A program made the translations under genes and the position numbers. This document shows, in pieces, positions 3,141 to 60,502 of a stretch of 64,000 nt of DNA. The stretch comes from Macrostomum lignano (taxonomy: Eukaryota): assembly GCA_002269645.1 (NCBI GenBank), contig NIVC01001647.1, positions 1-64,000 of the forward strand, given 5' to 3'. Below the pieces are notes generated by a model that saw only the letters and a program-made list of their open reading frames with translations, was not told where the DNA came from and made no database searches. Every line of letters starts with the position of its first letter. Within the stretch, counting starts at the first letter, position 1.

Positions 3141-3305
3141 GTCGCTCAAATATGTAAAAAATATTTCAAATTGTATAGCGCATATTTCTCACTATTTCTA
3201 CTTTATATACCCATCCTATATTACATCATAATATTGTCTCGTGGTTCCTTCTCACCTCTGCCTCTGTGTAATTTTTTTTCAAATTGACAGCATTGCGTCG
3301 ACGCT

Positions 3306-4178
3306 ATGGACAACGCTTTTGTACTGCAACTGTGCCTGGCCATTGCGCTGTTTCAACTGCCTGTGTGCAGTGCAGTAACTAAGTGCATTGTTGGTGCTTT
3401 CTCAGGGACAAATTATTCTACTGCCGCGTTTGACGCATTAAAGAGTGCAAAATCTAAAACGTGTCCCACAACGAGTAACGATAAATGCCATACAGTCTAC
3501 ACTTCCGCCAGCGGTCAGTTGGTAAGTGCAGACTAATAAACCAATATTGTATTAAATAGTCCGCTTGGCCATACATTTAACCTAATTTTTTCAGAAAGCA
3601 TTAGAATTCAAATGTGGCGCAACTGCCTGTGGTAATCCAACAAAAACAGACTGCGATAGTTGCGACGTTGATGATTGCAACACTGTAAATGATGTATTTA
3701 ATAAATTCTCATCATGCCCGTATTACGACGGCATAAATCAAACGACGATAACCACGGTTGAAATCTACTGTGTGAAAACACCTCAGAGCTGTAAACGACT
3801 AGATTATAAAGATGGAGTGAGTAATAGGCTGGTATTCTTTTTTCAATTAAAAACTATTTTACCGTTTGAAAAATACGCTGAATTTTTATCTTTCAGACTG
3901 ACGCCAAAGTCTATATTGGCTGCGAATCCGACTGTACGGCTAAGGAAACTGCTGCCACTCCGGCTAATGTGGTTAAAGGATGCACGTCTTGCAAAGGATA
4001 TGATTGCGCGCCCACCACCGCGCCTGCTGTTACGACACCAAATAAAAGTAAAAAAAAAACAGACGATGTCAAAGACTCAAAAGACGATGAAAAGAAGTCG
4101 CAGGACCAGCTGCAGCCGGGACAGCCGATCTTCCTAGCTCTACTAGTGGCTTTTTCACTGTGCTTGGCTCTACTCTAA
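3306..4178 (+). CDS. Secreted, probably GPI-anchored Cys-rich protein with two Ly6/uPAR (three-finger)-like modules, 239 aa, 3 exons
   Basis: Exons 3306-3521, 3595-3816, 3897-4178. Donors GTAAGT and GTGAGT, acceptors TTTTCAG and TTTCAG, both introns phase 0 (73 and 80 nt). N-terminal signal peptide (FVLQLCLAIALFQLPVCSA). Module 1 ends CDSCDVDDCN, module 2 ends CTSCKGYDC, followed by a Thr/Lys/Asp stalk and a hydrophobic C-terminus (IFLALLVAFSLCLALL). The fold assignment is inferred from Cys spacing only. Confidence 0.8.
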
Positions 4179-6533: not shown

Positions 6534-9500
6534 TTAATTTCCCTGTTGGCCATGTTGATTTCCGGTATGGCGCCATTTATGACTTTGGTTGCCATGGCTA
6601 CTATGATGACTTCGGTTGCCATGGCTACTATGATGACTTCGGTTGCCATGGCTACTATGATGACGGTGGTTGCCATGGCTACCATGATGACTTTGGTTGC
6701 CATGGCTACCGTGACGACTTTGGTTGCCATGGCTACTATGATGACTTTGGTTGCCATGGCTACCGTGACGACTTTGGTTGCCATGGCTACCATGATGAGT
6801 TTGGTTGCCATGGCTACCATGATGACTTTGACCCTGGTAATTGGGGCCAAAATAGTTGCCATACGAATCGTAATAACCAAAATTGTATTGAACACCATAG
6901 GGTTGATAGCCATTGTAACCATGGAAACCAGTGATTGCCTTCCGGCGGGACGCGGGATGATCGTACGGTTTTGGACGACTTTGCTTCTGATTCTGCCAAC
7001 TGCCATCGTGGCTGTTGGCGCTCTGCACTGCAGCCCCACCCGCTTCTGCAGCAACTGCGGCTGGCGGGTCGATCGTTGCTCGGGCCTTGGACTGCTGCTG
7101 CGACGCCTGCGTTGAGGTATGGTCGGTTGCCATGGTTACCACTGTTACTATTCTTTATCCTTACTTTTCTCTCTAGCTAGTCTAGCAACTCTGTTGCCTA
7201 GCAGGTAAACAAAGAAAAAAATCTTATGCATATCAAATAAAATCGGTTGCTATGGTTACCTAAGAAAACTGGTTGCTATGGATAACTGAGAGAATCGGCT
7301 GCTATGGTTACCTAAGAAAATTGGTTGCTATGGATAACTGAGAGAATCGGCTGCTATGGTTACCTAAGAAAATTGGTTGCTATGGATAACTCAAAAAATC
7401 GGTTGCTATGGACAACTAATAAAATCGGTTGCTATGGTTACCTAAGAAAATTGGTTACTAAGGTACCTAAAGAATGGTTGCTACGGTGCCTCAGTAAAAT
7501 CGGTTGCCACGGGTATCCAAGAGAATTGGTTGCCTAGGGTTACACCAGGGACAATGTTGCAATGGCTACCAAATGACGCGATTACTTTATTATCACATCA
7601 TTACCCAAAAAAGCCTCCCCATCAACGCCCAGCTTTTACCGCAACGGCACGCAGGTCGGCCAGATAATTCTCCCGCTCAATAGGGAAGCCGCGGGCCTCA
7701 GCAAACGCGGCGATGGCTTTCTCGGCCGGCCAGCCGTCGACGTCGATCAGGTAGCGGCAGATCATGTAGCCGGTGCGGTTCACCCCGTGGGTGCAGTGCA
7801 CAGCTACCACCGAGTCTGGGGGGGGGGTGATTGCAAACTCAGGAATTCCACTCGCGAAATCAATTGCTTTTGAGGAAATTGGCTCGGATGTGGATTCCGT
7901 TAAGATTTTTTTTGCAATAGATTTGGGATTTCCGCTGAGATTCTCTGGGATTTGGGACTTAATCTGAGATTCTCTTTGGGATTTAGGTCTTCCGCTGACA
8001 TTTTCATAAGGGTTTGGGATTTCCGTTGAGATTCTCTTAGGAATTTGGGATTTCCGTTGAGATTCTCTTAGGGATTTGGGATTCCTGTTGGGATTCTCTT
8101 AGGGATTTGGGATTTCCGTTGAGATTCTCTTAGGAATTTGGGATTTCCGTTGAGATTCTCTTAGGGATATGGGATTCCTGTTGGGATTCTCTTAGGGATT
8201 TGGGATTTTCGTTGAGATTCTCTTAGGGATATGGGATTCCTGTTGGGATTCTCTTAGGGATTTGGGATTTCCGTTGAGATTCTTTTAGGGATTTGGGATT
8301 CCTGTTGGGATTCTCTTAGGGATTTGGGATTCCTGTTGGGATTCTCTTAGGGATTTGGGATTTCCGTTGAGATTCTCTCAGGGATTTGGGATTTCCGTTG
8401 AGATTCTCTTAGGGATTTCTCAACGGATTCCCGTTGGCATTTTATGGAGCATGGATTTGCTAAGATACTCGTAGATAACACGGAAAATTACGAGTTTAAC
8501 CCTATAGGAGATATGATTAACAGGAATGGCTTTTACACCGAAACAAAGACCGGTGTATTTTACACGCGAACAAAGACTCACCAGGAGATTCCTGTCTGAA
8601 CTGGTTGACCACGGCTTCGAATCTGGAAGAGGATTATTTTTAAGCAGAGAGGCGGCGTGGAGAAGATGACAAAACGGCGTTCATACGTTGTAGCTTTGAT
8701 TTATTCACCTGCTTATGCACTTTTGGTCAGGGATGTTGTGGCCTTCAACAAAGATTTTCTCGTATTTCACTCCCTGGCTGGTGAATTCCTAGAATTCGAA
8801 AATTTATTTTTTTTGCCAGCCATTGAAACTTCAAACCTCTTAAAATGTTTACAACTACCTCAATCATATGAAAATCCAAAATTTAATCCCCAAAAATCAG
8901 ATTCATAAAAATCCCCATAAAAATCCCCAAAAATAAGATTCATAAAAATCCCCAAAAAATCAGATTCATAAAAATCCCCTAAAAATCAGATCCATAAAAA
9001 TCCCCAAAAAATCAGATCCATAAAAATCCCCTAAAAATCAGATCCATAAAAATCCCCTAAAAAATCAGATCCATAAAGATCCCCTAAAAAATCAGATCCA
9101 TAAAAATCCCCTAAAAATCAGATCCATAAAAATCCCCTAAAAAATCAGATCCATAAAAATCCCCTAAAAATCAGATCCATAAAAATCCCCTAAAAATCAG
9201 ATCCATAAAAATCCCCTAAAAAATCAGATCCATAAAAATCCCCCCAAAAAGCAGATCCATAAAAATCCCCTAAAAAATCAGATCCATAAAAATTCCCCAA
9301 AAATCAGATCCATAAAAATCCCCTAAAAAATCAGATCCATAAAAATCCCCCAAAAAGCAGATCCATAAAAATCCCCTAAAAAATCAGATCCATAAAAATT
9401 CCCCAAAAATCAGATCCATAAAAATCCCCTAAAAAATCAGATCCATAAAAATCCCCCAAAAATCAGATCCATAAAAATCCCCCAAAAATCAGATCCATAA

Positions 9501-10921
9501 AAATTCCCCAAAAATCAGATCCATAAAAATCCCCTTAAGGCAGGTTTACCTGAGGGTTGTAGTACCGAGTAGTGAAAGTGAGATCCACCACCAGTCCCAG
9601 TGGCAGCTTCATCTGTTTGCACCTGTTCATCAGCTCGGACGGGGTGAACTGCTCATGAGCTGGCATTGAGGCAACGTAGCACTGCGAATGCAATACAAAA
9701 TAGTTTTTTTATACAAAGCAATCATTGTGGCTGAGTCAATGTGTTCACCTCATTTTTATTGCTTTTTCAAATATGATAAAGCATAATTGCAACAAAATAA
9801 CTTATTAACTCACCTGTTTGAGTGGCACTTTAACCGCTAGAAAATGTGTGTCAGAGATAATCTCCTTAAACGGGTTATAGGCTTCCCATCTGGAAATTGG
9901 AATTCCGCGGGGGTATTCTTTAAGGGAATTCAAGGAGAATTCTTTAGGGAATTCGGGGGAGAGATTCATAAGGGGAATTCGGGGGAGAGATTCTTAAGGG
10001 AATTCGGGGGAGAGATTCTTAAGGGATTCTGGGGGGAGAGATTCATAAGGGGAATTCGGGGGAGAGATTCTTAAGGGGAATTTGGGGGGAGAGATTCTTA
10101 AGGGGATTCTGGGGGGAGAGATTCTTAAGGGGATTCTGGGGGAGAGATTCTTAAGGGGACTCTGGGGGGAGAGATTCTTAAGGGGAATTCGGGGGGAGAG
10201 ATTCTTAAGGGGAATTCGGGGGAGAGATTCTTAAGGGGATTCTGGGGGAGAGATTCTTAAGGGGATTCTGGGAGAGAGATTCTTAAGGGGAATTCGGGGG
10301 AGAGATTCTTAAGGGAATTCGGGGGGAGAGATTCTTAAGGGGAATTCGGGGGGAGAGATTTTTAAGGGGATTCTGGGGGAGAGATTCTTAAGGGGAATTC
10401 GGGGGGGAGAGATTTATAAGGGGAATTCGGGGGGAGAGATTCTTAAGGGGAATTCGGGGGAGAGATTCATAAGGGGAATTCGGGGGGAGAGATTTATAAG
10501 GGGATTCTGGGGGAGAGATTCTTAAGGGATTCTGGGAGGAGAGATTCTTAAGGGGATTCTGGGAGGAGAGATTCTTAAGGGGAATTCGGGGGGGGAGATT
10601 CTTAAGGGGAATTCGGGGGGGGGAGAGATTCTTAAGGGGAATTCGGGGGAGAGATTCTTAACGGGAATTCGGAGGGAGAGATTCTTAAGGGGAATTCGGG
10701 GGGGGGAGAGATTCTTAAAGGGGAATTCGGGGGGAGAGATTCTTAAGGGGAATTCGGGGGGGGAGAGATTCTTAAGGGGAATTCGGGGGGAGAGATTTTT
10801 AAGGGGAATTCGGGGGGGGGGAGAGATTCATAAGGGGAATTCGGGCAGATTGGTATAGAGAAGGCAGGTGTAAGTTATCAATAGCGCTACGCACTTACCG
10901 ATCTGGTATGCCCCCAGGCAT
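6534..10921 (-). CDS. DUSP11: DUSP11/PIR1-like RNA 5'-triphosphatase (dual-specificity phosphatase family), about 366 aa, 7 exons
   Basis: Exons 10921-10899, 9889-9814, 9681-9550, 8788-8709, 8622-8582, 7815-7640, 7106-6534, all GT-AG with consistent phases. Protein: MPGGIPDRWEAYNP...FLAVKVPLKQ...LGLVVDLTFTTRYYNPQ...KIFVEGHNIPD...VAVHCTHGVNRTGYMICRYLIDVDG...ERENYLADL. The HCTHGxNRTG P-loop and flanks match DUSP11. The last exon is less certain; the unspliced alternative stops at 7622. Confidence 0.9.
7243..7560. repeat. Intronic array of X-box-like words (GGTTGCTATGGTTAC / GGTTGCTATGGATAAC) in DUSP11 intron 6
   Basis: About 10 copies of the GGTTGCTATGG core. Confidence 0.85.
7900..8420. repeat. 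31-bp minisatellite (GGGATTTGGGATTTCCGTTGAGATTCTCTTA) in DUSP11 intron 5
   Basis: Direct periodicity. Confidence 0.9.
8870..9535. repeat. 25-26 bp minisatellite (AAAAATCAGATCCATAAAAATCCCC) in DUSP11 intron 3
   Basis: Direct periodicity. Confidence 0.9.
9915..10850. repeat. 26-29 bp minisatellite (GGGGAATTCGGGGGGAGAGATTCTTAA) in DUSP11 intron 1
   Basis: Direct periodicity with variable G-run lengths. Confidence 0.9.
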
Positions 10922-11269
10922 TGTGCAGCGCTGAACACAGAAAGGCAAATTTTTAATTGTTGAATTTGATGGACACGATGGATAGATATCTATGCAGTGG
11001 CCTCATAAATATATCTACGATCGTATATTAAGTCCTGAATGCAAATCAATTTTAAATAAAAGTCGAAGAAAGGAAGTCAAGTTTTAAATAAATAAATCAA
11101 AGTACCTTTTATTTAGCGTTCCGCATACATCATTGCTAGAGACCTCAATGGTAGTTAAAATAGCAGTGCATAGAGAGATAGAGAAGTGAGAACTAACTAT
11201 TAACCTGTGTTCCGGGATGCATCGAAAATATACTTCAAAGTTAGTTTATTTATATGCCATTCTACTACC

Positions 11270-11700
11270 AGTATAAAAATGGAATATTGTGTCCGTAATT
11301 TGTTCAGTATTAAAAGACTGTTGATACTTTTGATACATATCGCCAAAACGTTGAGAAAACAGTTCCAATAAAAAGTCTATCCAGAAAATCACCCTATTCT
11401 ACTAACAGTATAAGAATGGAATATTTTAGCAACAATAATGAAATGTACAGTATTGAAAAAATGTGTACTTTCGATACATATCGCCTAAACTTTGAGAAAA
11501 CATTGTATTTTTTTCTAATAATCTATCAGAAAATCTGGTAAAAAGTGAATAAAAATGTATCCATAGAAATGAAACTATTCTACAAACAATAATAAAATGG
11601 AATAATTTAGCGAAATTTTAATTTAACGAAAATACAGTACTTTCGATACATATCGCCTAAAAGTTGAGATAACATTTCTATAATTATTTTCACTAATTTA
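11270..11700. repeat. Three diverged copies of an AT-rich unit of about 140-180 bp
   Basis: The core CTTTCGATACATATCGCCTAAA and the word AATGGAATA each recur three times (cores near 11330, 11468, 11640). Confidence 0.65.
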
Positions 11701-11910
11701 TCTAACATATTTTGTAATCTATGAATAAAATATCACTATCTAGAAAAATCTGGCATAGAATAACGGAAACAGAATACGGAATTAGTATAGGCCTACTAAA
11801 AGTAGTCAGTCATAGTTATAAATGTAGAATAAAATATAATCCAGCCGACATGTATAGAAAATTGAATATTTTAAATAGAATCACAATTACAGCAAATCAG
11901 TTTATTAAGA

Positions 11911-13574
11911 TTAAATCGGCCTAATGCCAACCAGTTTTCTAAGCTGCTCAAAAATCATAAAAGTGATAACAGTGTGCGGCCCGATCCGCATCCAGTTCGG
12001 CACGAATCCTTTATAGAGGCCGGTCAGACCTTCGGTCCTGATGGCGGCAGCGGCGCAAGAGAACGCATTGGAATAGGCGGCTCCACGAAGGCCCACCGTG
12101 TCCTGGTTCATCACCCGGGTCTTCACTACATCCAATGGTGAGGTTGTGATGGCGCACATCAGCCCGGCGAACATGCTGGCTAGAAAGTGCAAAGGCAGGC
12201 CCTCTTTGAGCAGGCCTCTGCTCAGCATGGTGTGCTTGAAGTGATCGTAGGATGGCACCTGCATTGATGAGGGATCTTGTGTCTTAATGTGGAGTGCTGA
12301 CCTGACTCTGACTCTGACATCCTCAAAAACACCAAATCTGAATAAAACATACAATTGACCCATATAAGACACAAAATCTGACTGATAAACACACTAAATT
12401 TTACCTATAAACACAGCATATGACTAATAATAAACACAAAATCTGACCCATAAACACAAAATCTGACCTATAAACACAAAAACTGACCCATAAACACAAA
12501 AATGACCTATAAACACAAATAACGTGACTGATAATAAATACACTAAACCTAACCCATAAATACACTAAATCCGTCTCATAAAAAACACACTTAACCTGTC
12601 CCATAAACACACTAAATCTGTCCATAAACACACTAAAACGGACCCATAAACACACTAAAACTGACCCATAAACACACTAAAACTGACCCATAAACACACT
12701 AAAACTGTCCCATAAACACACTAAAACGGACCCATAAACACACTAAAACTGACCCATAAACACACTAAATCCGTCCCATAATAAACACACTAAATCTGAC
12801 CCATAGACACACTAAATCTGTACTATAAACACTAAAACTGAACCATAATAAATAAACACTAAATCTGTCCCATAATAAACACACTTAACCTGTCCCATAA
12901 ACACACTAAACCTGTCCCACAAACACACTAAGTCTGACCGATAAACACACCAATCTGACCCATAAACACCCTAAATCTGACCCAGCCTAACCCAAACCAA
13001 GCAGCAGACTGACCTGAGTAGCGGTGACAACAGCGGCCCGAGCTACAGTAGGCCCGATGCCTTTGTACAGCGCAGGCACGCCGCCCTCCGCATAGATACT
13101 AACAAAAGCGTGCCAGGTGCCGCGGTACCTGGCCCCGGACTCGAACGCCTGCATTCGAACTTTCACTAAATCCGTAGGCGTAGCCACAGCGCTACCCAGC
13201 ACGCCGGTGACAGCGCCCGAACAGATTTTCTTCCACAACGAGAAGTTGGCCGGATCGGTCTCCCCGAACAGCCGCTTGACAGGCTCGTACAGGCCCACCC
13301 GGATGGCCCCGTAGCCGCCATCGCGCATCATCGACGGCACGACGCCTTTGTACAGACCGCGAAGGCCTTCGTTGCGGACCACGGTGGCCAGGCCGCGAAT
13401 GAAACCGGCGTAGCGAGCGCTGCTCGTCCGGTTGGCTGCTTCGCCTTGGATCTGCAGGCGAATCTTCACCACGTCTACAGGATTGGTGACCACCGCCGCC
13501 GTCAGGTTGGAGCAGCCGGCCAGGCCCACCCGGACCCAGTCGCTTTCCGGCTGCTGCTGCTGCTGCGGGTTCAC
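11911..13574 (-). CDS. Mitochondrial carrier, SLC25 family (UCP/ucpB-like), about 300 aa, 2 coding exons; no in-frame ATG at the 5' end
   Basis: Exons about 13574-13014 and 12258-11911, phase-0 intron (CAG|GTCAGT ... TGCAG|GTG). Three carrier signatures: PVDVVKIRLQ, PTDLVKVRMQ, PLDVVKTRVM. C-terminal GFVPNWMRIGPHTVITFMIFEQL. The subfamily is inferred. Confidence 0.9.
12355..12985. repeat. About 22-bp minisatellite (CTGACCCATAAACACACTAAAA) filling the SLC25 intron
   Basis: Direct periodicity. Confidence 0.9.
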
Positions 13575-13590
13575 GATAATAGCAGCACCG

Positions 13591-14350
13591 TATCAATCTA
13601 TCAGCCTAGCCGTCTACTAAATATCAACTTATCAATCTATCAGCCTAGCCGTCTACTAAATATCAACTTATCAATCTATCAGCCTAGCCGTCTACTAAAT
13701 ATCAACTTATCAATCTATCAGCCTAGCCGTCTACTAAATATCAACTTATCAATCTATCAACCTAGCCGTCTACTAAATATCAACTTATCAATCTATCAAC
13801 CTAGCCGTCTACTAAATATCAACTTATCAATCTATCAACCTAGCCGTCTACTAAATATCAACTTATCAATCTATCAACCTAGCCGTCTACTAAATATCAA
13901 CTTATCAATCTATCAGCCTAGCCGTCTACTAAATATCAACTTATCAATCTATCAGCCTAGCCGTCTACTAAATATCAACTTATCAATCTATCAGCCTAGC
14001 CGTCTACTAAATATCAACTTATCAATCTATCAACCTAGCCGTCTACTAAATATCAACTTATCAATCTATCAACCTAGCCGTCTACTAAATATCAACTTAT
14101 CAATCTATTAACCTAGCCGTCTACTAAATATCAACTTATCAATCTATCAACCTAGCCGTCTACTAAATATCAACTTATCAATCTATCAGCCTAGCCGTCT
14201 ACTAAATATCAACTTATCAATCTATTAACCTAGCCGTCTACTAAATATCAACTTATCAATCTATCAGCCTAGCCGTCTACTAAATATCAACTAATCAATC
14301 TATCAAAATAGACATTTACTAAATATCAACTTATCAATCTCAACTTATCA
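13591..14350. repeat. 39-bp minisatellite (TATCAATCTATCAGCCTAGCCGTCTACTAAATATCAACT), about 18 near-identical copies
   Basis: Direct periodicity; begins immediately upstream of the SLC25 coding start. Confidence 0.95.
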
Positions 14351-14696
14351 ATGTATCAAATGCTAACTTATTAATATATCAACTCAGTTCATCAATATTA
14401 AAAAGTTAAGACCAGTCAGAGTAACTGATTGGTAAAGAAATATTATAAATATAGTTTATATTTTAACAGATTAGAATTAAAAACTCTAGTGATCATCTCG
14501 TTTTCATTGAATTAGGCTTCTTTACGAGTAAATGCCAAAACAAATGTATGAAATATCCAGAAATAAAATTAGCATTAAAACACGCAGTGAGACAGTAGTT
14601 CTTATGCGCTAATTAATAGTTAATTTGTAAAATTATAAATTTTTTACTTGCAAAATTAACCACCTTCCAACGTACAAAACAATGGCAGTTCCCATC

Positions 14697-15115
14697 AACC
14701 AATCAAAAAATCGCTGCAGTTCTCTCTATTCTCCCAACCAATCAGAGAATCGCTGCAGTTCTCTCTATTCTCCCAACCAATCAGAGAATCGCTGCAGTTC
14801 TCTCTATTCTCCCAACCAATCAGAGAATCGCTGCAGTTCTCTCTATTCTCCCAACCAATCAGAGAATCGCTGCAGTTCTCTCTATTCTCCCAACCAATCA
14901 GAGAATCGCTGCAGTTCTCTCAATTCCCCAACCAATCAGAGAATCGCTGCAGTTCTCTCTATTCTCCCAACCAATCAGAGAATCGCTGCAGTTCTCTCTA
15001 TTCTCCCAACCAATCAGAGAATCGCTGCAGTTCTCTCTATTCCCCCAACTAATCAGAGAATCGCTGCAGTTTTCTTGATTCTACCAACCAATCAGAGAAT
15101 CGCTGCAGTTTTCTC
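14697..15115. repeat. 39-bp minisatellite, each unit carrying an AACCAATCAGA (CCAAT box) word, about 11 copies
   Basis: Unit CCAATCAGAGAATCGCTGCAGTTCTCTCTATTCTCCCAA. Confidence 0.9.
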
Positions 15116-15141
15116 ATACCGCTTTGAATTTCCAGCTCTAA

Positions 15142-16967
15142 CTAACAGTTCCCATCCTGCTCAGTGAGCCGCAGCCACTCCAGTAGGGCCATCTTGGTCC
15201 CGGTACTAACCCGGTTCTTGGCGTCAGGCCTGCAGCTGAGCAATTGTGAAACCTGTACCGGAACCTCGGACCTATCCAGAGACCAGCTGGGTACCGTTTC
15301 CTCATCTGGAGTTTCTTCTCTGCTATTCTGAAAATTGGAGGGGATTGCGCTGTTGGTGTGTTGCTTTATTACTGTCTCTTACACTTCCAGATCTCCGACT
15401 CTTCGTGACTTTCTGTCACTCTTCATGACGTTCTGTCACTCTTTGTGACTTTCTGTCACTCTTTATGACTTTCTGTCACTCTTTATGACGTTCTCTCTTC
15501 ATGACGTTCTGTCACTCTTCATGACTTTCTGTCACTCTTTATGACGTTCTGTCACTCTTCATGACGTTCTGTCACTCTTCATGACGTTCTGTCACTCTTC
15601 ATGACGTTCTATCACTCTTCATGACGTTCTGTCACTCTTCATGACGTTCTGTCACTCTTCATGACGTTCTGTCACTCTTCATGACGTTCTGTCACTCTTC
15701 ATGACGTCCTGTCACTCTTCAGCATGACCTTCACTAATTTACACTCTCGCTGTCTCAGCAGACAAGCCCTAGTCGCAGAAGTGCAGCACAGCTAACCTGA
15801 CGATCGCCATCATTGGCTAGGCCGTCGCTTTCTTCAAGCAGCAAAGTGCCGCCGATCCGCCTGGCCAGCCGGCGGTCAATCCAAACCAGCCGGTCCACCT
15901 CGCGCGGCTCCGGCTTGGCGGCCGAGGTCAGGCTAGCCGAAGACTCCGACAGTCTGGCGTGGAAGTACAGCACCAGATGGTGCCTAGCAGGCCAGCCAAT
16001 GTCCAGACTGGCCGGGAACACGGACTCCCAGGCCGACCTCCTCTGCCAGCTCTCTGGCCGCTGCCTGTGCGGCGGTCTCGCCGAGATCCAGATGACCGCC
16101 TGGCGGCACCCACACCTCCGGGAAGGCGGACATGCCGGCCGGGCGCCTGGTGAGCAGCAGGCGACCGTCGCCAGATTCCAGCAGTATAGCGGCTGCGGCC
16201 GCTACGCGAGTAAAACGACGGCGGGTGTCAGCAGCGTCGGGCTGGCAAGGGGGAGCATTCAGCAGGGGTGGACTGTGGTGATCACTCCTCTCTGTCTCCC
16301 TATTGTTAAACTCCCCGCCAAGTATCTGATAAACACCTTTTGCTTAATTGTTAAACTCCCCGTGTCATAATTAAACACCCCCTCTCTCTCTCCATTTTTA
16401 AACTGCCCTAGAAAGCTTAAACACACGACACCAATAAACTACCTAAGAGGCTTAAATCCTCATTGTTAAACACCCTAGCCCAATAGGCTTAAACACACCA
16501 CACTGCTAAACTACCCTAACTCAATAGGCTTAAACACAGCACACTGCTAAACTACCTAAGAGGCTTAAACACAGCACACTGCTAAACTAAGAGGCTTAAA
16601 CATCCCTTGTTAACCCTCCCACTCACACTCCCCCTAGCCACCAGACCCCTGGTTGCAGCCGCACCTGAGCGGGAGGCTGCAAACCGACACCTTCGGCAAT
16701 CTTGGCCACCGGGCAGTCGGCAGGCCGGTGCAGCTCTGTGTGATGCGTTGACGTCGCCGAACTGTCAAGCAGTCCAGCGTCGATAGATTCGCAAGTCCGA
16801 GCACGAAGCGGCGACAGGCAGACGCGATCCGGCAGCAGGTCGATGGTCACCTGAGCTGAGCGGCCGGGCCTTCGGGCTCCAGGCGGAGCGCCAAGCCGGC
16901 GCACGCAGCCCAGCAGTGATTCAGCAAAGCCCGGGTAGCGGTTCTCGGCCGGGCAGTACACGAACAT
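15142..16967 (-). CDS. NUDT17: NUDT17-like Nudix hydrolase, 3 exons; frameshifted with an apparent deletion just after the Nudix box as assembled (possible pseudogene)
   Basis: Exons 16967-16665, 16241-15797, 15327-15142. Motifs LHRPADCP, ILLESGDGRLLLTRR...VWVPPGGHLDLGETAAQAAARELAEEVGL (Nudix box), WESVFP...HHLVLYF, RVSTGTKMALLEWL match NUDT17. Exon 2 is 445 nt (3n+1) and changes frame near 16030. Confidence 0.85.
15405..15720. repeat. 20-bp minisatellite (TTCTGTCACTCTTCATGACG) in NUDT17 intron 2
   Basis: Direct periodicity. Confidence 0.9.
16355..16615. repeat. Degenerate repeat (GGCTTAAACACAGCACACTGCTAAACTACC) in NUDT17 intron 1
   Basis: Recurrent CTTAAACAC and CTAAACTACC words. Confidence 0.7.
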
Positions 16968-17037
16968 GGGGACTCTGCGTAGGCGGAGCCACAGCAACCG
17001 GGTTTTAGCGGCAGGTCGGTGGGGTTAGAGTGCAGCC

Positions 17038-17510
17038 GATGGGTGTTTAAAGGGGTTAGGGCTGCAGCTGATGGGGTGTTTAAAGGGCTTAGGGGTGCAG
17101 CTGATGGGGTGTTTAAAGGGGTTAGGGCTGCAGCTGATGGGGTGTTTAAAGGGGTTAGGGCTGCACCCGATGGGGTGTTTAAAGGGGTTAGGGCTGCAGC
17201 TGATGGGGTGTTTAAAGGGCTTAGGGGTGCAGCTGATGGGGTGTTTAAAGGGGTTAGGGCTGCCGCTGATGGGGTGTTTAAAGGGGTTAGGGCTGCAGCT
17301 GATGGGGTGTTTAAAGGGGTTAGAGGTGCAGCTGATGGGGTGTTTAAAGGGGTTAGGGCTGCAGCTGATGGGGTGTTTAAAGGGGTTAGAGGTGCAGCTG
17401 ATGGGGTGTTTAAAGGGGTTAGGGCTGCAGCTGATGGGGTGTTTAAAGGGGTTAGGGCTGCCGCTGATGGGGTGTTTAAAGGGGTTAGGACTGCAGCTGA
17501 TGGGGTGTTG
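17038..17510. repeat. 33-bp minisatellite (GATGGGGTGTTTAAAGGGGTTAGGGCTGCAGCT), about 14 copies
   Basis: Direct periodicity; source of the repetitive ORFs at 16847-17540. Confidence 0.95.
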
Positions 17511-18259
17511 AGGCGTGTGGGTTCAACCAACGATATATAGAAAGAAAAAGGAATGTTTATTTTCGTAAAAATGTATTAAAATGTTGATTTCATACTTTTT
17601 CTGCAGATTTTAAATTTACGTTTTAAATTTTAAGCAAAAATAAAACAAACAAACATACAACACTACTCATAGTGGCAAACAGAAACGAAGACAAATCACT
17701 TGCTACAATTAATAAAGTCTATATCGATTTTTAATAGCCTTATTTCAGAGTCCTATACAACAGTGAATATATAGACTATATATATTTCTATAATAGCAGA
17801 ATGTTGACAGAAAGAGTGTAAAACTGGATTTTAAAAAGAAACACAAAGACGCACGCAAAACTGCAATGTTTAACAGCAGGAAATTAATAAAAGGTCAACG
17901 CTGAAGTCACAATACGGAAACATTTAGATCTAAAGGATAATAGACACACAGATTGAGTGAAAATTTGCAAATATAATCCTTATAACAGTTGCGTAAGTAG
18001 TTTAGTTAGGGCAAAATATGGCCAGCACGAGAAGCCCGTCAATCAATAGGTCGAGACGGTTCCTAATTCAGCTATTACATGGTCTAAAAGGACACGTTCA
18101 CGTGTATTATTATAAATATGCTTATGTCTCTAACCATAATACAACTTTTTGTTCTTATCTGAATACTATTAGTGAGTTAATAGTTGCGATTAACTGACCT
18201 AAGATTGGGACACTCAACCTAGGATATTCAGACTCCATTCTAATGTTGTGATTCCCCTT

Positions 18260-18500
18260 GATAAAATTAGGATTCCCCGCACCAAGATTGGGATTCCCCG
18301 TTCTAATATGGGTATGCCCGTCCTAAGATTGGGATTCCCCGTCCTAAGATTGGAATTCCCCGTCCTAAGATTGTGATTCCCCGTTCCAATATTAGGATGT
18401 CCGTCCTAAGATTGGGATTTCCCATCCTAATATTGGGATTCCCCGTCCTAAGATTGGGATTCCCGTCCTAATATTGGGATTCCCCGTCCTAGATTGGGGT
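18260..18500. repeat. About 21-bp minisatellite (GATTGGGATTCCCCGTCCTAA)
   Basis: Direct periodicity downstream of the centrin stop. Confidence 0.85.
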
Positions 18501-18685
18501 TCCCGGGTTCTGTGCGGTGAAAATAGGATTTTGGCTTAGAGCTAAAGCCTATCAGTGACTAAAAAGCTTAGTGAATCTTTAAAAAAACAAAAGCAACAAA
18601 TCGAGTAGGTCTATGGTCCAATAAAAACGTAGGAATAAGCCAGATAAGCACTACAATATAAATTATACCAAGTATACAAAGCAGC

Positions 18686-20276
18686 TCAATACAGGCTGGT
18701 CTTCTTCATAATCCGCAGAAATTCCGACTCGTTAATCTCGCCGTCGCCGTCCCTGTCGGCTTCGTCGATCATCTCCTGAAGCTCCTCGTCTGTGAGATTC
18801 TCGCCCAGCTCCTTGGCAACGCGTTTCAAATTTTTAAACGAAATCTTGTCAGTCTCGTCGTCGTCGAATAGGCGGAAGGCTTTGAGAATCTCCTCCTTCG
18901 AGTCTTTCTCCGTCATCTTGCTGGTCATCATACTTAGGAAGTCGTTGAAGTCGATGGTGCCTTCGTGGAGGAAGTCGGGTTTCGTTAATTAATACAATGT
19001 AGAAAATTTAATTGTGAGAGCTCATAGAAGAAGATAGAACAGATGGAACATCATCAGGTACTCGTCCAGCACATGGAAAATTGTATAAGAACACCTGGGG
19101 AACATGAGAACACCTGGGGAACACATGAGAACAGTGGGGAACACATGAGAACAGTGGGGAACACATAAGAGCAGTGGAAAACACATAAAAAGACCTTGGG
19201 AACACAAAAGAACACCTAAGGAACACATAAGAACAGCTAAGGAACACATAGAACACTGGGGAACACATGAGAACACCTGGGGAACACATATGAACTGCTG
19301 GGGAACACTTGAGAACACTGGGGAACACATAAGAACAGTGGGGAACACATGAGAACACCTGGGGAACACATATGAACTGCTGGGGAACACATGAGAACAC
19401 TGGGGAACACATAAGAGCAGTGGGAAACACATGAAAAGACCTTGGGAAACACATGAAAAGACCTTGGGAACACAAAAGAACACCTAGGGAACACAAAAGA
19501 ACACCTAGGGAACACATAAGAACAGCTAAGGAACACATAGAACACTGGGGAACACATGAGAACACCTGGGGAACACATAAGAACAGCTGGGAACACATGA
19601 GAACACTGGGGAACAGATGAGAAGACCTGGGGAACACAAAAGAACACCTAGGGAACACATAAGAACAGCTGGGGAACATAGAAACACTGGGTAACACATA
19701 AGAACAGTGGGGAACACATAAGAACAGCTGGGAACACATGAGAACACTGGGGAACAGATGAGAAGACCTGGGGAACACAAAAGAACACCTAGGGAACACA
19801 TAAGAACAGCTGGGGAACATAGAAACACTGGGTAACACATAAGAACAGTGGGGAACACATAAGAACAGCTGGGGAACACATGAGAACACCTGGGGAACAC
19901 AGTATTAATTGACAGGCTGTCTACCAAACGATTAAAAAAAGTAGCACATGTCGGCAACTAGACTGAGGCCTACAGTCAACCTGCCCACCCCACTGCAGAA
20001 TGAATCTCCTAATAAAAGCTCGAAGAAGCCCTCACCTGTGCCTTCCTTGTCGTACTCGGCAATCAGCTTCTTAATCTCTTCTTTCTTGGGCTCGAAGCCG
20101 AGCGCCCGCATGGCCACCTTCAGTTCCTTGATGTCGATGGTCCCGGAGCCGTCGTTATTAAATAGGTCAAATGCTTCGCGAATCTCCTGCTTCTGCTCCT
20201 CGGACAGCTCCAGCTTGATGCCGGCCGTCTTCTTCTTCTGGCCGCCGCCAGGGCTTGGCTTCTTGAAGGTCGACAT
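18686..20276 (-). CDS. CETN2: Centrin (centrin-1/2 type EF-hand protein), 171 aa, 2 exons
   Basis: Exons 20276-20036 and 18960-18686, phase-1 intron (G|GTGAG ... CACGAAG|GC). Protein: MSTFKK...[17 protein letters not shown]...[17 protein letters not shown]...[17 protein letters not shown]...[24 protein letters not shown]. Confidence 0.93.
19085..19900. repeat. About 21-22 bp minisatellite (GAACACATGAGAACACCTGGGG) filling the centrin intron
   Basis: Direct periodicity. Confidence 0.9.
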
Positions 20277-56151: not shown

Positions 56152-56364
56152 TGTTGTGTTCTAGTTGATTGATTAAATTCAATTCAGTTGGAGACACTTG
56201 AGTCTCGCTCAATATATTTATACTCATGTGCACGTTGAAAACAGTGTTACGCAATCGAAACAACGATACCATGATTGAACGCACGATGCATATAAGGTAA
56301 TTGAACAATTCTAGCCTCAAAGTTAGTTAGTTACAACACCTAGGCCCGATGCACAGTCACTACA
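56152..56364 (-). repeat. 3' LTR (213 bp)
   Basis: Preceded on the - strand by the PPT. Confidence 0.95.
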
Positions 56365-59300
56365 TTCTCCCCCCTTCCGGAAGAGGATAACGCGCCGGTT
56401 GCCGTCGAGCTCGAGTTGACCTTCGAAGCTCAGGTGGAGGTGGCGGCTCGCCCGTCCGTGGGGGCGGAGCCGGCGGCAGCGGCAAATCGAACCAGTCGTC
56501 CTCTTGGTCGGCCGCGCCGTTGTCAGCCGGTGGGCTGTTGCACTTAACCAGCCGACTCGCTTGCCACTTTGTACCGTCGGACAGCACGAAGGTGTTGCGC
56601 CCTGCTTTGGAGGCGATCTTTAGCGGTTCCTTCAGTCGGGTCGCCAGCTTGTGCGCTCGGTGCGGCGTCTGTCGCCAGACCCAGTCTCCGGCCTGGAGCA
56701 TAGAGTCACGAGCTCGCCTTCGCTTGTTGGTGTAGTCGGCATTCTTGGCTTGCCTCTGTGCGATACTGTCTCGCAGGTCGCTGTCGTCCCGCTGTTGCAC
56801 TGGAGTTGGCCTGAGCAGCTGCAGTCCGGACCGCAGCTTGCGCCCGATCATCAGCTCGGCTGGAGTCAGCCCGGTGAGAGCGTGCTGGCTGGTCCTGTAG
56901 GTCTTGAGCACCAGGTCGATGGCGTCCTCGAACTTCGCTCCCGCCCTCAGGTTCGCTGCCAGGCCCTCCTTCAGACTCCGGTTGAATCGCTCGACTCCGC
57001 CGTTGCCTTGCGGGTAGTACCGGCTCACTCGGCTGTGCTTGATGCCCTCGGCTCGCAGGAACTCTTCGAACTCGTCGCTGACGAACTGGGGTCCGTTGTC
57101 GCTGATCAGCATCTTCGGGACTCCCCACCGGCCGAATAGCTTCCGAAGCGTCTTGATGATGTTGGCAGAGGTGACGGTTTCCATGGCTGCAATCTCCGGC
57201 CACTTGCTGTACAGGTCGTGGATCACCAGTAGAAACCGCTGGTGTCGAGGAGCCGCGGCGACCTCGCCGAAGATGTCGATCTCGACCTTGTCCCACGGTC
57301 CATCTGGCCACTCGATTGGTGTCACGATCGTCTGTTGAGGCTTGCCGGACTTCTCCGCCAGAGTGCAGGCCGTGCAGTTCTTGACGTAGTCCTCCACCTG
57401 CCGGTCAATTCCAGGAAACCAGACCGTGTCGCGGCACCGCTGCTTTGACCGAACGACGCCCGGATGCCCTTCGTGGGCCTCCTCGATGACTTGAAGTCGC
57501 AGGCTCGTCGGGATGATCGCGCGTTCACCACGACCGAGGCACTGACCGTTGTTCCAGCAGAACAGCTCGTCCCGGACGTTGAAGTACGGCTTTAGAGAGC
57601 TGTCCACCTTCGATGGCCAGCCGCCCGAGATGTACTGCAAAACCGCCTGCAGCACTTCGTCCTCCTTGGTCGCCGTTGCCAGTGCGTCTGCCGTCAGCGT
57701 TGTCTTCGAGTCGACGACTGCGTAGACGTAGCCCTCCTCGTCGGTCTCCTCGGCTGGAACGCGCTCCGTCGTGGCCCATCTGGACAGCATGTCCGCGCAC
57801 TTGTTGTCAGCGCCAGGGATGTGCTCAAACCGGACGTCGTAGCCGCGAAGTCTCTCGACCCATCGATGAATGCGAAGAGGCCTGTGCCCCATGCCTTTCG
57901 AGTCGAGCAGAGTTGTCAGGGCCTTGTGGTCGGTGCGCAGCGTTACTCGTCTGCCGTATAGATAGTAGTGCCAGCGTTCGATGCTCCATACACAGGCCAG
58001 GGCTTCTCGCTCTCCGGCTGAGTATCGCTTTTCCGCTGGGCTGAGTGCTCTCGATGCGAACGCGATTGGCACCTCTTTTTCGTTTTGTACTTGGCTGAGC
58101 ACTGCCCCCAGTCCGTCTAGACTTGCATCGCAGGTGACGTACGTCTCAGCTTGGCAGTCAAAATGAGCTAACACTGGGCTGCTGGTTACGGCTGACTTGA
58201 GTGTACGGAAGGCTGTACGTTCCCGCTCACCCCAGTGCCAGTCCGCGTCCTTTTTGAGCAGTTGTCTCAGAGGCTCGGCAATTGCTGAGTAATGCGGTAT
58301 GAACTTGCGCAAAAAGTTCACTGCTCCGAGAAACGATTGAATTTGCGCGACCGTTGATGGCTCAGGAATTCTTAGAATTGCGTCGACGTTGCACTTGGTC
58401 GGTTTGATGCCGTCTGCAGAGATGACCAATCCGAAGAAATCCACGCTCGCCTGCCGGAATTTGCACTTCTCTCGATTGAGTGTGAAGCCTTCGCGATGAA
58501 TCCGCCCTAGGACTTCTCGGAGGTTCTTGTCGTGCTCAGTCTCGTCCTTGCCGTGCACCAGGATGTCGTCCACGATGTTGATGGCGCCAGGAGCTCCTCG
58601 AAGCACCGTCTGCAGGGCTCGCTGGAAGGCAGCTCCGGAGCTAGATAGCCCGAATGGCACCACGGTGAACTGGTACAGGCCGGCATCGGTGATGAAGCAC
58701 GTCAGTCCTCGAGAGTCTGGATGCAGCGGAATCTGCTGGTAGCCTTGACGCAGGTCCAGCTTGCTGAAGCACTTCGAGCCGTTGATGCTGGCCGATAGGT
58801 CCTCGATTGACGGTACCGGATAGCGGTCCGCGATCACCGCCTTGTTGACCTGCCGCAGATCCACGCAGAGACGAACCTTGTTGGACTCCTTCTTGCGCGT
58901 CACGACAACGTTGCTAACCCACTCGGACGCGTCGACCTTCTCAATGATGCCCTGTTGCTCCATCCGGCTGATCTCTGACGTCACTTCGTCCTTCAGGCCG
59001 ATCGGCAGCTTCCGCATTGGCTGAGACACTGGCTTGACCGAGGCGTCGATCTTTGTCCGGTGAATGAAGCTCTTGGACCGGCCCAGACCGTCGAAGATTC
59101 CGGGGAAGTCGCGCTCGATCGTAGTCTCGCTGATGCTCATCACTCTGTTGTCACCTTGGAAGATTTTGAATCCGAGGGCCTGAAACAGGTCGCGGCCCAG
59201 GATGTTCGCTCCTTTGTCGGCGACGTAGAATGTGGCTTCTGTCCTGATGCCGTTGAACGTCACTGGAAGCTCGACCTTGCCGATGGTCTTGATCGCAGAT

Positions 59301-60262: not shown

Positions 60263-60263
60263 T

Positions 60264-60476
60264 TGTTGTGTTCTAGTTGATTGATTAAATTCAATTCAGT
60301 TGGAGACACTTGAGTCTCGCTCAATATATTTATACTCATGTGCACGTTGAAAACAGTGTTACGCAATCGAAACAACGATACCATGATTGAACGCACGATG
60401 CATATAAGGTAATTGAACAATTCTAGCCTCAAAGTTAGTTAGTTACAACACCTAGGCCCGATGCACAGTCACTACA
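60264..60476 (-). repeat. 5' LTR (213 bp)
   Basis: Matches 56152-56364; followed on the - strand by the PBS. Confidence 0.95.
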
Positions 60477-60502
60477 CTCAGTACTAGAATATGCTCGAGT
60501 GC

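What the first reader, a model, noticed from the sequence alone, without database searches (positions are those of the whole stretch)
13555..13600. SLC25 carrier has no genomic start codon and may take its AUG from the spliced leader
Seen: the carrier ORF is blocked upstream by an in-frame TGA (13593-13595). There is no ATG between it and the first transmembrane repeat; the first Met lies about 80 codons in. The AGs available there (CAG|CAG|CAG run) are phase 0, and I found no phase-compatible ATG-bearing upstream exon. Known: flatworm spliced leaders end in AUG, which has been shown to serve as initiator Met. Inference: SL-AUG plus CAG... gives an in-frame N-terminus, so translation would depend on trans-splicing. 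The acceptors before DUSP11 (9 nt) and the Ly6-like gene (15 nt, 3291) are also in frame with a terminal AUG.
Basis: partly seen in the sequence, partly recalled or inferred. Interest (0 to 1): 0.7.

Follow-up and report, generated by a model that had tools for sequence, protein, structure and literature searches.

The report
Flatworm carrier gene lacking start codon
An intact mitochondrial carrier gene of the flatworm Macrostomum lignano has no start codon in the genome and most likely gets its AUG from the trans-spliced leader RNA, a mechanism already known in flatworms, so this is a new example and not a new kind of thing.

Summary
On the minus strand a two-exon, 302-codon SLC25 carrier (ucpB-like) is closed upstream by TGA 13595-13593. 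It has no ATG until codons 82-83. Five in-frame CAG acceptors (13565-13551) sit exactly where homologues have their Met.

The organism was unknown but is now identified. The window's LTR retroelement is 99.7% identical over 4.3 kb to Macrostomum lignano contig NIVC01003978.1. The published M. lignano spliced leader ends in ...TTGCATG, and 30-39% of its genes are trans-spliced.

Joining the SL at the first CAG gives M-QQQQ-PESD-W..., the same N-terminal length as the closest homologue. Upstream there is no convincing cis donor or ATG exon. The best donor-like site scores 2.5 bits, against 4.4-8.1 for five verified donors in the window. The repeat-subtracted distance to the upstream same-strand NUDIX gene (about 620 bp) meets the published operon criterion.

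No RNA data for this gene could be reached, so trans-splicing at this site is inferred and not shown. The rivals are a weak-donor upstream exon, GTG initiation or a base error, and a fresh pseudogene.

SL-AUG initiation was shown in flatworms in 2006, so this is a new member of a known kind. Interest is low to moderate and mainly concerns annotation.

The parts
13593..13595 (-). In-frame TGA that closes the carrier reading frame upstream. It lies in the last unit of the 39-nt minisatellite.
13572..13574 (-). GTG, the only moderately good near-cognate codon in the open frame (A at -3). It lies 3 codons upstream of the first acceptor AG.
13551..13565 (-). (CAG)5 run giving five tandem AG acceptors, all at codon position 1. 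The first AG (13564-13563) lies about 28 nt downstream of a TTGAT branch-point-like site and is the predicted SL acceptor. The mature 5' end would read ...TTGCATG|CAGCAGCAGCAGCCGGAAAGC.
   Evidence: sequence read
13014..13562 (-). Carrier exon 1 from the first acceptor: QQQQPESDWVRVGLAG...TATQ. Donor is CAG|GTCAGT at 13013. GC is 0.64.
13328..13333 (-). First in-frame ATG ATG (codons 82-83). Starting here would delete helix 1 and most of repeat 1.
12259..13013 (-). Intron 1, filled by a 22-nt minisatellite.
11911..12258 (-). Carrier exon 2 (VPSYDHFKH...GIRPI) including the TAA stop. Acceptor is tgcag|GTG.
11901..11906 (-). AATAAA poly(A) signal of the carrier, 5 nt after the stop.
13591..14340 (.). 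39-nt minisatellite of 19 copies that abuts the acceptor region. On the gene's strand it has stops in all three frames and no ATG. It is the putative outron body.
14341..14695 (-). AT-rich (GC 0.27) unique segment with TTTATAA at 14639-14633 and five short dead-end ATG ORFs (14575, 14507, 14496, 14392, 14315). It contains no canonical donor.
14696..15115 (.). 39-nt array of 10.8 copies. Every unit carries an NF-Y/CCAAT box (AACCAATCAG on the plus strand, CTGATTGGTT on the minus strand). It is a possible promoter element for the carrier.
15365..15370 (-). AATAAA at the end of the upstream same-strand NUDIX-domain gene (NUDIX exon 16343-15987, stop at 15755). It marks the start of the intergenic or outron interval.
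10899..10932 (-). DUSP11-like mini-exon, used as a positive control. Acceptor ...gtgttcag|, then 9 nt, then ATG 10921, MPGGIPDR, donor CG|GTAAGT. The acceptor is in frame with an ATG-ending leader.
3272..3308 (+). 5' end of the Ly6-like gene: T8CAAATTGACAG| acceptor, exon start at 3291, then 15 nt, then ATG 3306. It is in frame with an ATG-ending leader and has no stop.

Best explanation
The carrier gene of Macrostomum lignano is an SL-acceptor gene whose genomic first exon begins at codon 2.

The primary transcript is either polycistronic with the upstream NUDIX gene or starts at a CCAAT/TATA-like promoter about 1 kb upstream. It carries an outron made largely of a 39-nt minisatellite. The spliceosome joins the 35-nt spliced leader (...TTGCATG) to the first AG of the CAG run (exon start 13562). 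The leader's terminal AUG then becomes codon 1 of M-QQQQ-PESDWVRVGLAG..., a 299-residue ucpB-like mitochondrial carrier with a normal-length N-terminus.

The acceptor is an in-frame CAG repeat, so use of any of the five AGs keeps the frame and only changes the number of Gln residues.

Shown: the gene anatomy, the intactness of the protein, the phase of the acceptors, the identity of the organism and its SL, and the lack of a good cis donor. Inferred: that SL is joined here and that translation starts on the SL AUG.
For: (a) Organism. An exhaustive protein search with a piece of the window's retroelement returned PAA49096.1 [Macrostomum lignano] as the only near-identical hit. Its contig NIVC01003978.1 (Mlig_3_7) aligns to window 56152-60485 at 99.68% over 4,334 nt.

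(b) SL. The M. lignano leader ends in ATG, and 30-38.8% of its genes are trans-spliced. About 70% of trans-spliced genes are conserved genes (PMC8629364, PMC5730564). The SL is conserved and ATG-terminated across the genus, and the authors state that the AUG is sometimes used as the initiator (PMC10468722 and its supplement).

(c) Precedent. In S. mansoni the SL AUG is in frame in 28% of trans-spliced mRNAs, and more than 40 cDNAs need it (Cheng et al. 2006, as summarised in PMC9851317).

(d) Anatomy. All five AGs are phase 0 with no stop. M+QQQQPESD places 9 residues before the conserved Trp, identical to Pecten MAKIENEQL-W and within the 8-14 range of close homologues.

(e) Orphan acceptor. 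Between the upstream gene's AATAAA (15370) and the acceptor there is no GT[AG]AG donor. The best donor-like site scores 2.5 bits, against 4.41-8.07 for five verified donors. The DUSP11 mini-exon in the same window shows that a real ATG mini-exon has a canonical GTAAGT next to its minisatellite intron.

(f) An unprocessed leader would carry five dead-end uORFs and no usable AUG.

(g) The repeat-subtracted distance from the NUDIX 3' end to the acceptor is about 620 bp, under the 1000 bp operon criterion of PMC8629364.

(h) The protein keeps all 60 family-invariant positions and three PX[DE]XX[KR] motifs, so the gene is under constraint.
Against: There is no transcript, RACE, ribosome-profiling or peptide evidence for this gene. 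The protein databases hold no M. lignano product of it, whether full-length or N-terminal fragment. That is uninformative, because this locus's centrin is missing too.

The acceptor does not match the enriched M. lignano trans-acceptor motif [T/C]TNCAG (it reads CCGCAG), although only about 44% of sites carry that motif. Its polypyrimidine tract is weak.

Weak-donor upstream exons that would be in frame do exist: ATG 15155 with ACT|GTTAGT gives MGT-QQQQ..., and ATG 14695 with CAA|GTAAAA is another. The carrier's own intron uses a non-R +3 donor (GTCAGT), so such donors are not impossible. A GTG codon in good -3 context lies 3 codons upstream.
Confidence: 0.65

Rival explanations
1. A cis-spliced upstream mini-exon supplies the ATG, as in the neighbouring DUSP11 gene. 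The 39-nt minisatellite, with or without the CCAAT array, would then be intron 1 instead of an outron.
For: In this window minisatellites routinely fill introns (carrier intron 1, centrin, DUSP11). DUSP11 has an 8-codon ATG mini-exon of exactly this kind. Phase-compatible candidates exist. ATG 15155 GGA ACT|GTTAGT gives MGT+QQQQPESDW. The same donor with ATG 15305 gives a 53-residue Arg-rich extension. ATG 14695...CAA|GTAAAA is a third. The segment 15116-15397 is GC 0.51, more exon-like than the AT-rich spacer. Flatworm acceptors are often shared between cis- and trans-splicing (PMC12582326).
Against: None of the candidate donors reaches the weakest verified donor. They score -1.0, 0.7 and 2.5 bits, against 4.41-8.07. 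The only canonical GT[AG]AG in 2.4 kb (15382) sits 8 nt before the upstream gene's AATAAA and is out of phase with all five CAG acceptors. About 1.8 GTNAGT sites are expected by chance in this interval, so finding one in phase is not significant. There is no ATG-plus-donor next to the array, which is where the DUSP11 model would place it (14341-14450).
Confidence: 0.14
2. Translation starts at the GTG at 13574. This could be genuine non-AUG initiation on an mRNA that is not trans-spliced. Alternatively the base could be an assembly error, polymorphism or very recent A-to-G change of an ordinary ATG.
For: The GTG is in frame, has A at -3, and would give MNPQQQQQPESDW, 12 residues before the Trp, which is within the homologue range. 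A single transition separates it from ATG. The 39-nt array upstream contains no ATG on this strand, so a transcription start inside it would leave the GTG as the first reasonable codon.
Against: Exclusive GUG initiation of a housekeeping nuclear gene is rare. No promoter is evident within the array, and a start further upstream adds five AUG uORFs. The GTG lies upstream of five consecutive good AGs in an organism that trans-splices about 45% of conserved genes (my own estimate from the fractions in PMC8629364), so it would normally be discarded with the outron.
Confidence: 0.08
3. The locus is a freshly disabled duplicate or an assembly artefact. Expansion or insertion of the minisatellite removed the original 5' UTR and ATG. 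M. lignano has extensive recent duplication, so a second intact copy would do the work.
For: The minisatellite ends only 26 nt before the first CAG, and the closing TGA lies inside its last unit. Mlig_3_7 has 180-312 Mb of duplicated sequence (PMC5730564). No annotated M. lignano protein for this gene was found.
Against: The remaining 299 codons, both splice sites, the stop and the poly(A) signal are intact, and all invariant family residues are kept. A random truncation would have to fall within the few codons between the Met and the first conserved residue and also leave in-frame acceptors there. The missing annotation is uninformative, because this locus's centrin is missing too.
Confidence: 0.1

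Closest known systems
SL-AUG-initiated mRNAs of flatworms (Cheng, Cohen, Ndegwa & Davis 2006, J Biol Chem 281:733; 'slORFs' in PMC9851317)
   Same: The organism is a flatworm whose leader ends in AUG. The acceptor is in frame with the ORF with no intervening stop. There is no genomic AUG at the homology-defined N-terminus, so the SL would supply codon 1.
   Different: The documented cases are cDNAs of Schistosoma mansoni and other parasites. Here the species is the free-living M. lignano, and the case rests on genomic anatomy only. The acceptor is a (CAG)5 run that keeps the frame whichever AG is used, which I have not seen described.
SL trans-spliced genes and operons of Macrostomum lignano (Wudarski et al. 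2017, PMC5730564; Ustyantsev & Berezikov 2021, PMC8629364)
   Same: A conserved gene lies on the same strand as its upstream neighbour. The repeat-subtracted spacing is about 620 bp, under the 1000 bp criterion. The intergenic space is repeat-rich and the acceptor has no cis donor.
   Different: Trans-splicing of this gene was not verified here. The acceptor lacks the enriched [T/C]TNCAG motif. A CCAAT-box array and a TATA-like element suggest the gene may instead have its own promoter.
ucpB-like mitochondrial substrate carriers (SLC25 family; Dictyostelium ucpB and invertebrate 'ucpB-like' proteins)
   Same: It has three Mito_carr repeats and is 55-59% identical to mollusc, brachiopod and nemertean ucpB-like proteins over the full length. 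It has a short N-terminus without a presequence.
   Different: The N-terminus is Gln-rich, and there is no genomic start codon. Substrate and function are unknown for this subfamily.
DUSP11-like gene in the same window (cis-spliced ATG mini-exon)
   Same: Both have a minisatellite immediately upstream of the first long coding exon and an acceptor at the start of that exon.
   Different: DUSP11 has an 8-codon ATG exon with a canonical GTAAGT donor just upstream of the array. The carrier has no such exon or donor.

Membership tests
Flatworm genes that depend on the SL 3'-terminal AUG for initiation | The organism possesses an SL RNA whose leader ends in AUG. | tested here: met
   The window is identified as Macrostomum lignano. 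The published SL is ...TTGCATG (PMC8629364, PMC5173321, PMC10468722).
Flatworm genes that depend on the SL 3'-terminal AUG for initiation | The 3' splice acceptor upstream of the ORF is in frame with it, with no stop between the junction and the conserved protein. | tested here: met
   There are five AGs at 13564-13551, all at codon position 1, and the frame is open into the carrier.
Flatworm genes that depend on the SL 3'-terminal AUG for initiation | There is no genomic in-frame AUG at or near the homology-defined N-terminus. | tested here: met
   TGA lies at 13595-13593 and the first ATG is at codon 82. Homologues begin 8-14 residues before the Trp.
Flatworm genes that depend on the SL 3'-terminal AUG for initiation | The mature mRNA carries the SL joined at that acceptor. 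| not testable with these tools
   No M. lignano transcript or read data were reachable. Exact and homology look-ups for SL-AUG products were negative because the species' transcriptome is not in the database.
Flatworm genes that depend on the SL 3'-terminal AUG for initiation | Translation initiates at the SL AUG. | not testable with these tools
   This needs ribosome profiling, N-terminal proteomics or a reporter assay.
Flatworm genes that depend on the SL 3'-terminal AUG for initiation | No cis donor or ATG exon upstream could use the acceptor instead. | tested here: inconclusive
   There is no canonical donor in phase, and the best donor-like sites score 2.5 bits or less against 4.4-8.1 for real donors. 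Weak in-phase candidates (15146 GTTAGT, 14647 GTAAAA) cannot be excluded from sequence alone.
SLC25 mitochondrial carrier family | Three tandem repeats of about 100 residues (Pfam Mito_carr), each with the PX[DE]XX[KR] signature, about 300 residues in all. | tested here: met
   Pfam PF00153 matches three times with E=3.5e-71. PVDVVK, PTDLVK and PLDVVK are present, and all 60 invariant columns are kept.
M. lignano operon (criterion of PMC8629364) | An adjacent same-strand gene lies less than 1000 bp away after subtracting repeats. | tested here: met
   From about 15350 (after AATAAA 15370) to 13563 is about 1.79 kb. Subtracting arrays of 420 and 750 bp leaves about 620 bp.
M. lignano operon (criterion of PMC8629364) | The downstream gene is SL trans-spliced. 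| not testable with these tools
   No RNA data were available.

The most novel reading that the evidence does not exclude
The AUG-ending leader acts as an evolutionary buffer. Once a gene is trans-spliced in frame, its genomic start codon and 5' UTR become dispensable and can be overwritten by the minisatellites that pervade this genome. Here the array ends 26 nt from the acceptor. An in-frame (CAG)n acceptor makes the junction frame-proof, yielding isoforms that differ only in poly-Gln length. If this is general in M. lignano, a class of conserved genes would be invisible or truncated in ATG-based annotations.
Probability: 0.25. Interest if true: 0.45.

Novelty: new member of a known kind. 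Interest (0 to 1): 0.3.

Why it matters
The main significance is practical. Gene finders that require a genomic ATG will miss or truncate such genes; starting at Met 82 would delete the first transmembrane helix. In line with that, no M. lignano protein for this carrier was found in the public protein collection, although this locus's centrin is missing too, so the absence proves little.

M. lignano is a transgenic model, so an SL-AUG-dependent gene with a frame-proof CAG acceptor would be a convenient substrate for testing how flatworm ribosomes use the leader AUG. The mechanism itself has been established since 2006, so a specialist would not be surprised.

Tried and rejected
- **Transcript-derived proteins.** I made a full-length search, an N-terminal-only search and exact look-ups of ten candidate N-termini: SL-AUG at each CAG, the GTG start and the internal Met. 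All were negative. They are uninformative because the species' transcriptome is not in the database.
- **Species identification by centrin.** The best hits were 85% identical and came from assorted phyla, so this failed. I briefly doubted the flatworm assignment until the retroelement piece found M. lignano PAA49096.1.
- **P0118, the closest carrier hit (61%).** It comes from an unidentified ENA metagenome eukaryote and is not a relative.
- **SL RNA gene and other RNA families in the window.** None were found.
- **DUSP11 start.** That was my error. The real start is the mini-exon at 10921.
- **Paper supplements for an SLC25/UCP gene flagged as trans-spliced.** There was nothing usable; the only match was a mis-named MRPL12 transcript.
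- **NUDIX-carrier fusion protein.** Rejected, because the NUDIX frame ends at a stop (15755) followed by AATAAA (15370).
- **Acceptor at 13599-13598.** Rejected, because it is out of frame and runs into TGA.
Full report
**Observation.** The finding concerns the minus strand. Reading it and listing ORFs shows an open frame that begins after TGA 13595-13593. It runs through GTG 13574 and a (CAG)5 run (13565-13551) into a mitochondrial carrier sequence. A script confirmed several points:
- No ATG occurs in any frame between the TGA and 13331.
- The first in-frame ATGs are 13331 and 13328, which are codons 82-83.
- The five AGs of the CAG run all place the next base at codon position 1.

**Gene model.** Exon 1 ends at 13014 with the donor CAG|GTCAGT. 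The intron (13013-12259) is a 22-nt minisatellite. Exon 2 (12258-11911) starts after tgcag| and ends in TAA, followed 5 nt later by AATAAA. The 302-codon product has three Mito_carr repeats (Pfam E=3.5e-71). Its best matches are 'ucpB-like' carriers of bivalves, a brachiopod and a nemertean at 55-59% identity over the full length.

In an alignment with 23 homologues it keeps every one of the 60 invariant columns, so it is not a decayed pseudogene. The closest homologues begin only 8-14 residues before the conserved Trp. The genomic frame therefore lacks essentially just a Met, not a coding exon.

**Organism.** Searches with the carrier and with the window's two-exon centrin found nothing near-identical and no flatworm hit. 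Exact look-ups failed as well.

An exhaustive search with a 581-residue piece of the window's retroelement ORF then returned one near-identical protein, with all other hits at 51% or less. That protein is PAA49096.1, 'hypothetical protein BOX15_Mlig004385g37, partial [Macrostomum lignano]'. Its contig, NIVC01003978.1 of assembly GCA_002269645.1, aligns to window 56152-60485 at 99.68% identity over 4,334 nt, including both 213-nt LTRs.

The window is therefore M. lignano or a sibling lineage. The repeat content agrees with this: the genome paper reports 21% LTR elements and 15% simple or tandem repeats (PMC5730564).

**The spliced leader.** M. lignano has a single SL, CGGTCTCTTACTGCGAAGACTCAATTTATTGCATG. 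About 30% of its genes are trans-spliced (38.8% in PMC5730564), roughly 70% of the trans-spliced genes are conserved genes, and 15% of genes lie in operons (PMC8629364). The SL is conserved and ATG-terminated in M. cliftonense and M. hystrix. [quoted passage not shown]

All reported flatworm SLs end in ATG (PMC12582326). [quoted passage not shown] 2006, as summarised in PMC9851317).

**Fit of the SL-AUG model.** A branch-point-like TTGAT lies about 28 nt upstream of the first CAG. The only earlier AG (13599-13598) is out of frame and runs into a stop. Joining ...TTGCATG to exon start 13562 gives M-QQQQ-PESD-W. That is nine residues before the Trp, the same as Pecten (MAKIENEQL-W). Any of the other four AGs also keeps the frame.

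**Upstream region.** On the gene's strand the order is as follows:
- The NUDIX-domain gene (Pfam E=1.4e-15), with its stop at 15755 and AATAAA at 15370.
- A GC 0.51 unique segment.
- A 39-nt array (14696-15115) in which each unit is a consensus NF-Y/CCAAT box.
- An AT-rich segment with TTTATAA (14639-14633).
- The 39-nt minisatellite (14340-13591), then the acceptor.

The only two AATAAA signals on this strand between 16000 and 11700 are the ones that end the NUDIX gene and the carrier. After subtracting tandem repeats, as the M. lignano operon study does, the gap is about 620 bp. That is below its 1000-bp operon threshold. Whether the gene is an operon member or has its own promoter, the leader would contain five dead-end uORFs and no usable AUG. 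That is what an outron looks like.

**Rival 1, cis-spliced ATG exon.** The window supplies a positive control. DUSP11 has an 8-codon ATG mini-exon with a canonical CG|GTAAGT donor, separated from exon 2 by a minisatellite intron. Splicing restores MPGGIPDRWEAYNPFKE....

For the carrier, a scan of 7 kb found 489 phase-0 ATG...GT combinations but none with a convincing donor. In the 2.4 kb upstream there is a single GT[AG]AG, at 15382. It sits 8 nt before the NUDIX AATAAA and is out of phase with all CAG acceptors. The best donor-like site scores 2.5 bits, against 4.41-8.07 for five verified donors.

In-phase weak candidates remain: 15146 ACT|GTTAGT gives MGT+QQQQ..., and 14647 CAA|GTAAAA is another. 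The carrier's own donor is GTCAGT, so I keep this rival at about 0.14.

**Rival 2, the GTG at 13574.** This covers non-AUG initiation, or an A/G error or polymorphism. It cannot be excluded from sequence. However, the codon lies in what would be the outron (confidence about 0.08).

**Rival 3, fresh pseudogene or artefact.** The array ends 26 nt from the first CAG, which fits this idea. A truncation would nonetheless have to fall precisely between the Met and the first conserved residue while leaving everything else intact (confidence about 0.10).

**Side claims.** The Ly6-like gene has T8CAAATTGACAG| 15 nt before ATG 3306. DUSP11 has ...gtgttcag| 9 nt before ATG 10921. Both are in frame with an ATG-ending leader and have no stop. 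Two of two in frame is only suggestive, because chance alone gives about 0.11.

**What could not be done.** No M. lignano RNA data or orthologous loci were reachable. Held supplements contain nothing on this gene. The decisive test is trivial for anyone with the public SL-read tracks.

**Verdict.** SL-AUG initiation is established flatworm biology, so this is a new member of a known kind. Its value is mainly for annotation, and it could serve as an experimental substrate in a transgenic model. Interest 0.3.

Noticed in passing
window 14696-15115: A 39-nt tandem array of 10.8 copies. Every unit is a consensus NF-Y/CCAAT box (AACCAATCAG on the plus strand, CTGATTGGTTGG on the minus strand). On the minus strand it is followed by TTTATAA at 14639-14633. 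It may be a minisatellite-borne promoter or enhancer for the carrier gene.
   Followed up: partly
window 10932-9814 (minus strand): The DUSP11-like gene starts in an 8-codon mini-exon (ATG 10921, donor CG|GTAAGT at 10898). Intron 1 (10898-9890) is the 27-nt minisatellite. The ATG at 9969 that an ORF finder picks lies inside a variant repeat unit within that intron and is not the start.
   Followed up: yes
window 56152-60485: An LTR retroelement with identical-length 213-nt LTRs and an uninterrupted 1300-residue gag-pol ORF. It is 99.7% identical to a copy on M. lignano contig NIVC01003978.1, whose annotated fragment has a frameshifted C-terminus. It was probably active recently. I used it only piecewise for species identification and did not reconstruct it.
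   Followed up: partly
window 9000-20000 and throughout: Minisatellites with 20-40 nt units fill almost every intron and intergenic gap. Examples are the carrier intron (22 nt), the centrin intron (21 nt), the DUSP11 introns (27 and 26 nt) and the NUDIX 3' UTR (20 nt, with an ATG in every unit). Coding exons are GC 0.55-0.64, while unique spacers are as low as 0.27.
   Followed up: partly
window 20276-9500 (minus strand): Four consecutive same-strand genes lie here: centrin, a NUDIX-domain gene, the ucpB-like carrier and DUSP11-like. Their repeat-subtracted spacings are about 0.6-1.0 kb, which is borderline to within the published M. lignano operon criterion.
   Followed up: partly
window 35778-32694 (minus strand): A CBM21-domain (PPP1R3-like glycogen-targeting subunit) gene in at least three exons, with a long repeat-filled intron. 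Its first ORF has no ATG before 'MESPNYVA', and the nearby upstream AGs would put an SL AUG out of frame.
   Followed up: no
protein database: The public collection holds M. lignano GenBank proteins (for example PAA49096.1) but neither this carrier nor this locus's centrin. The deposited annotation therefore appears to be incomplete for this region.
   Followed up: partly
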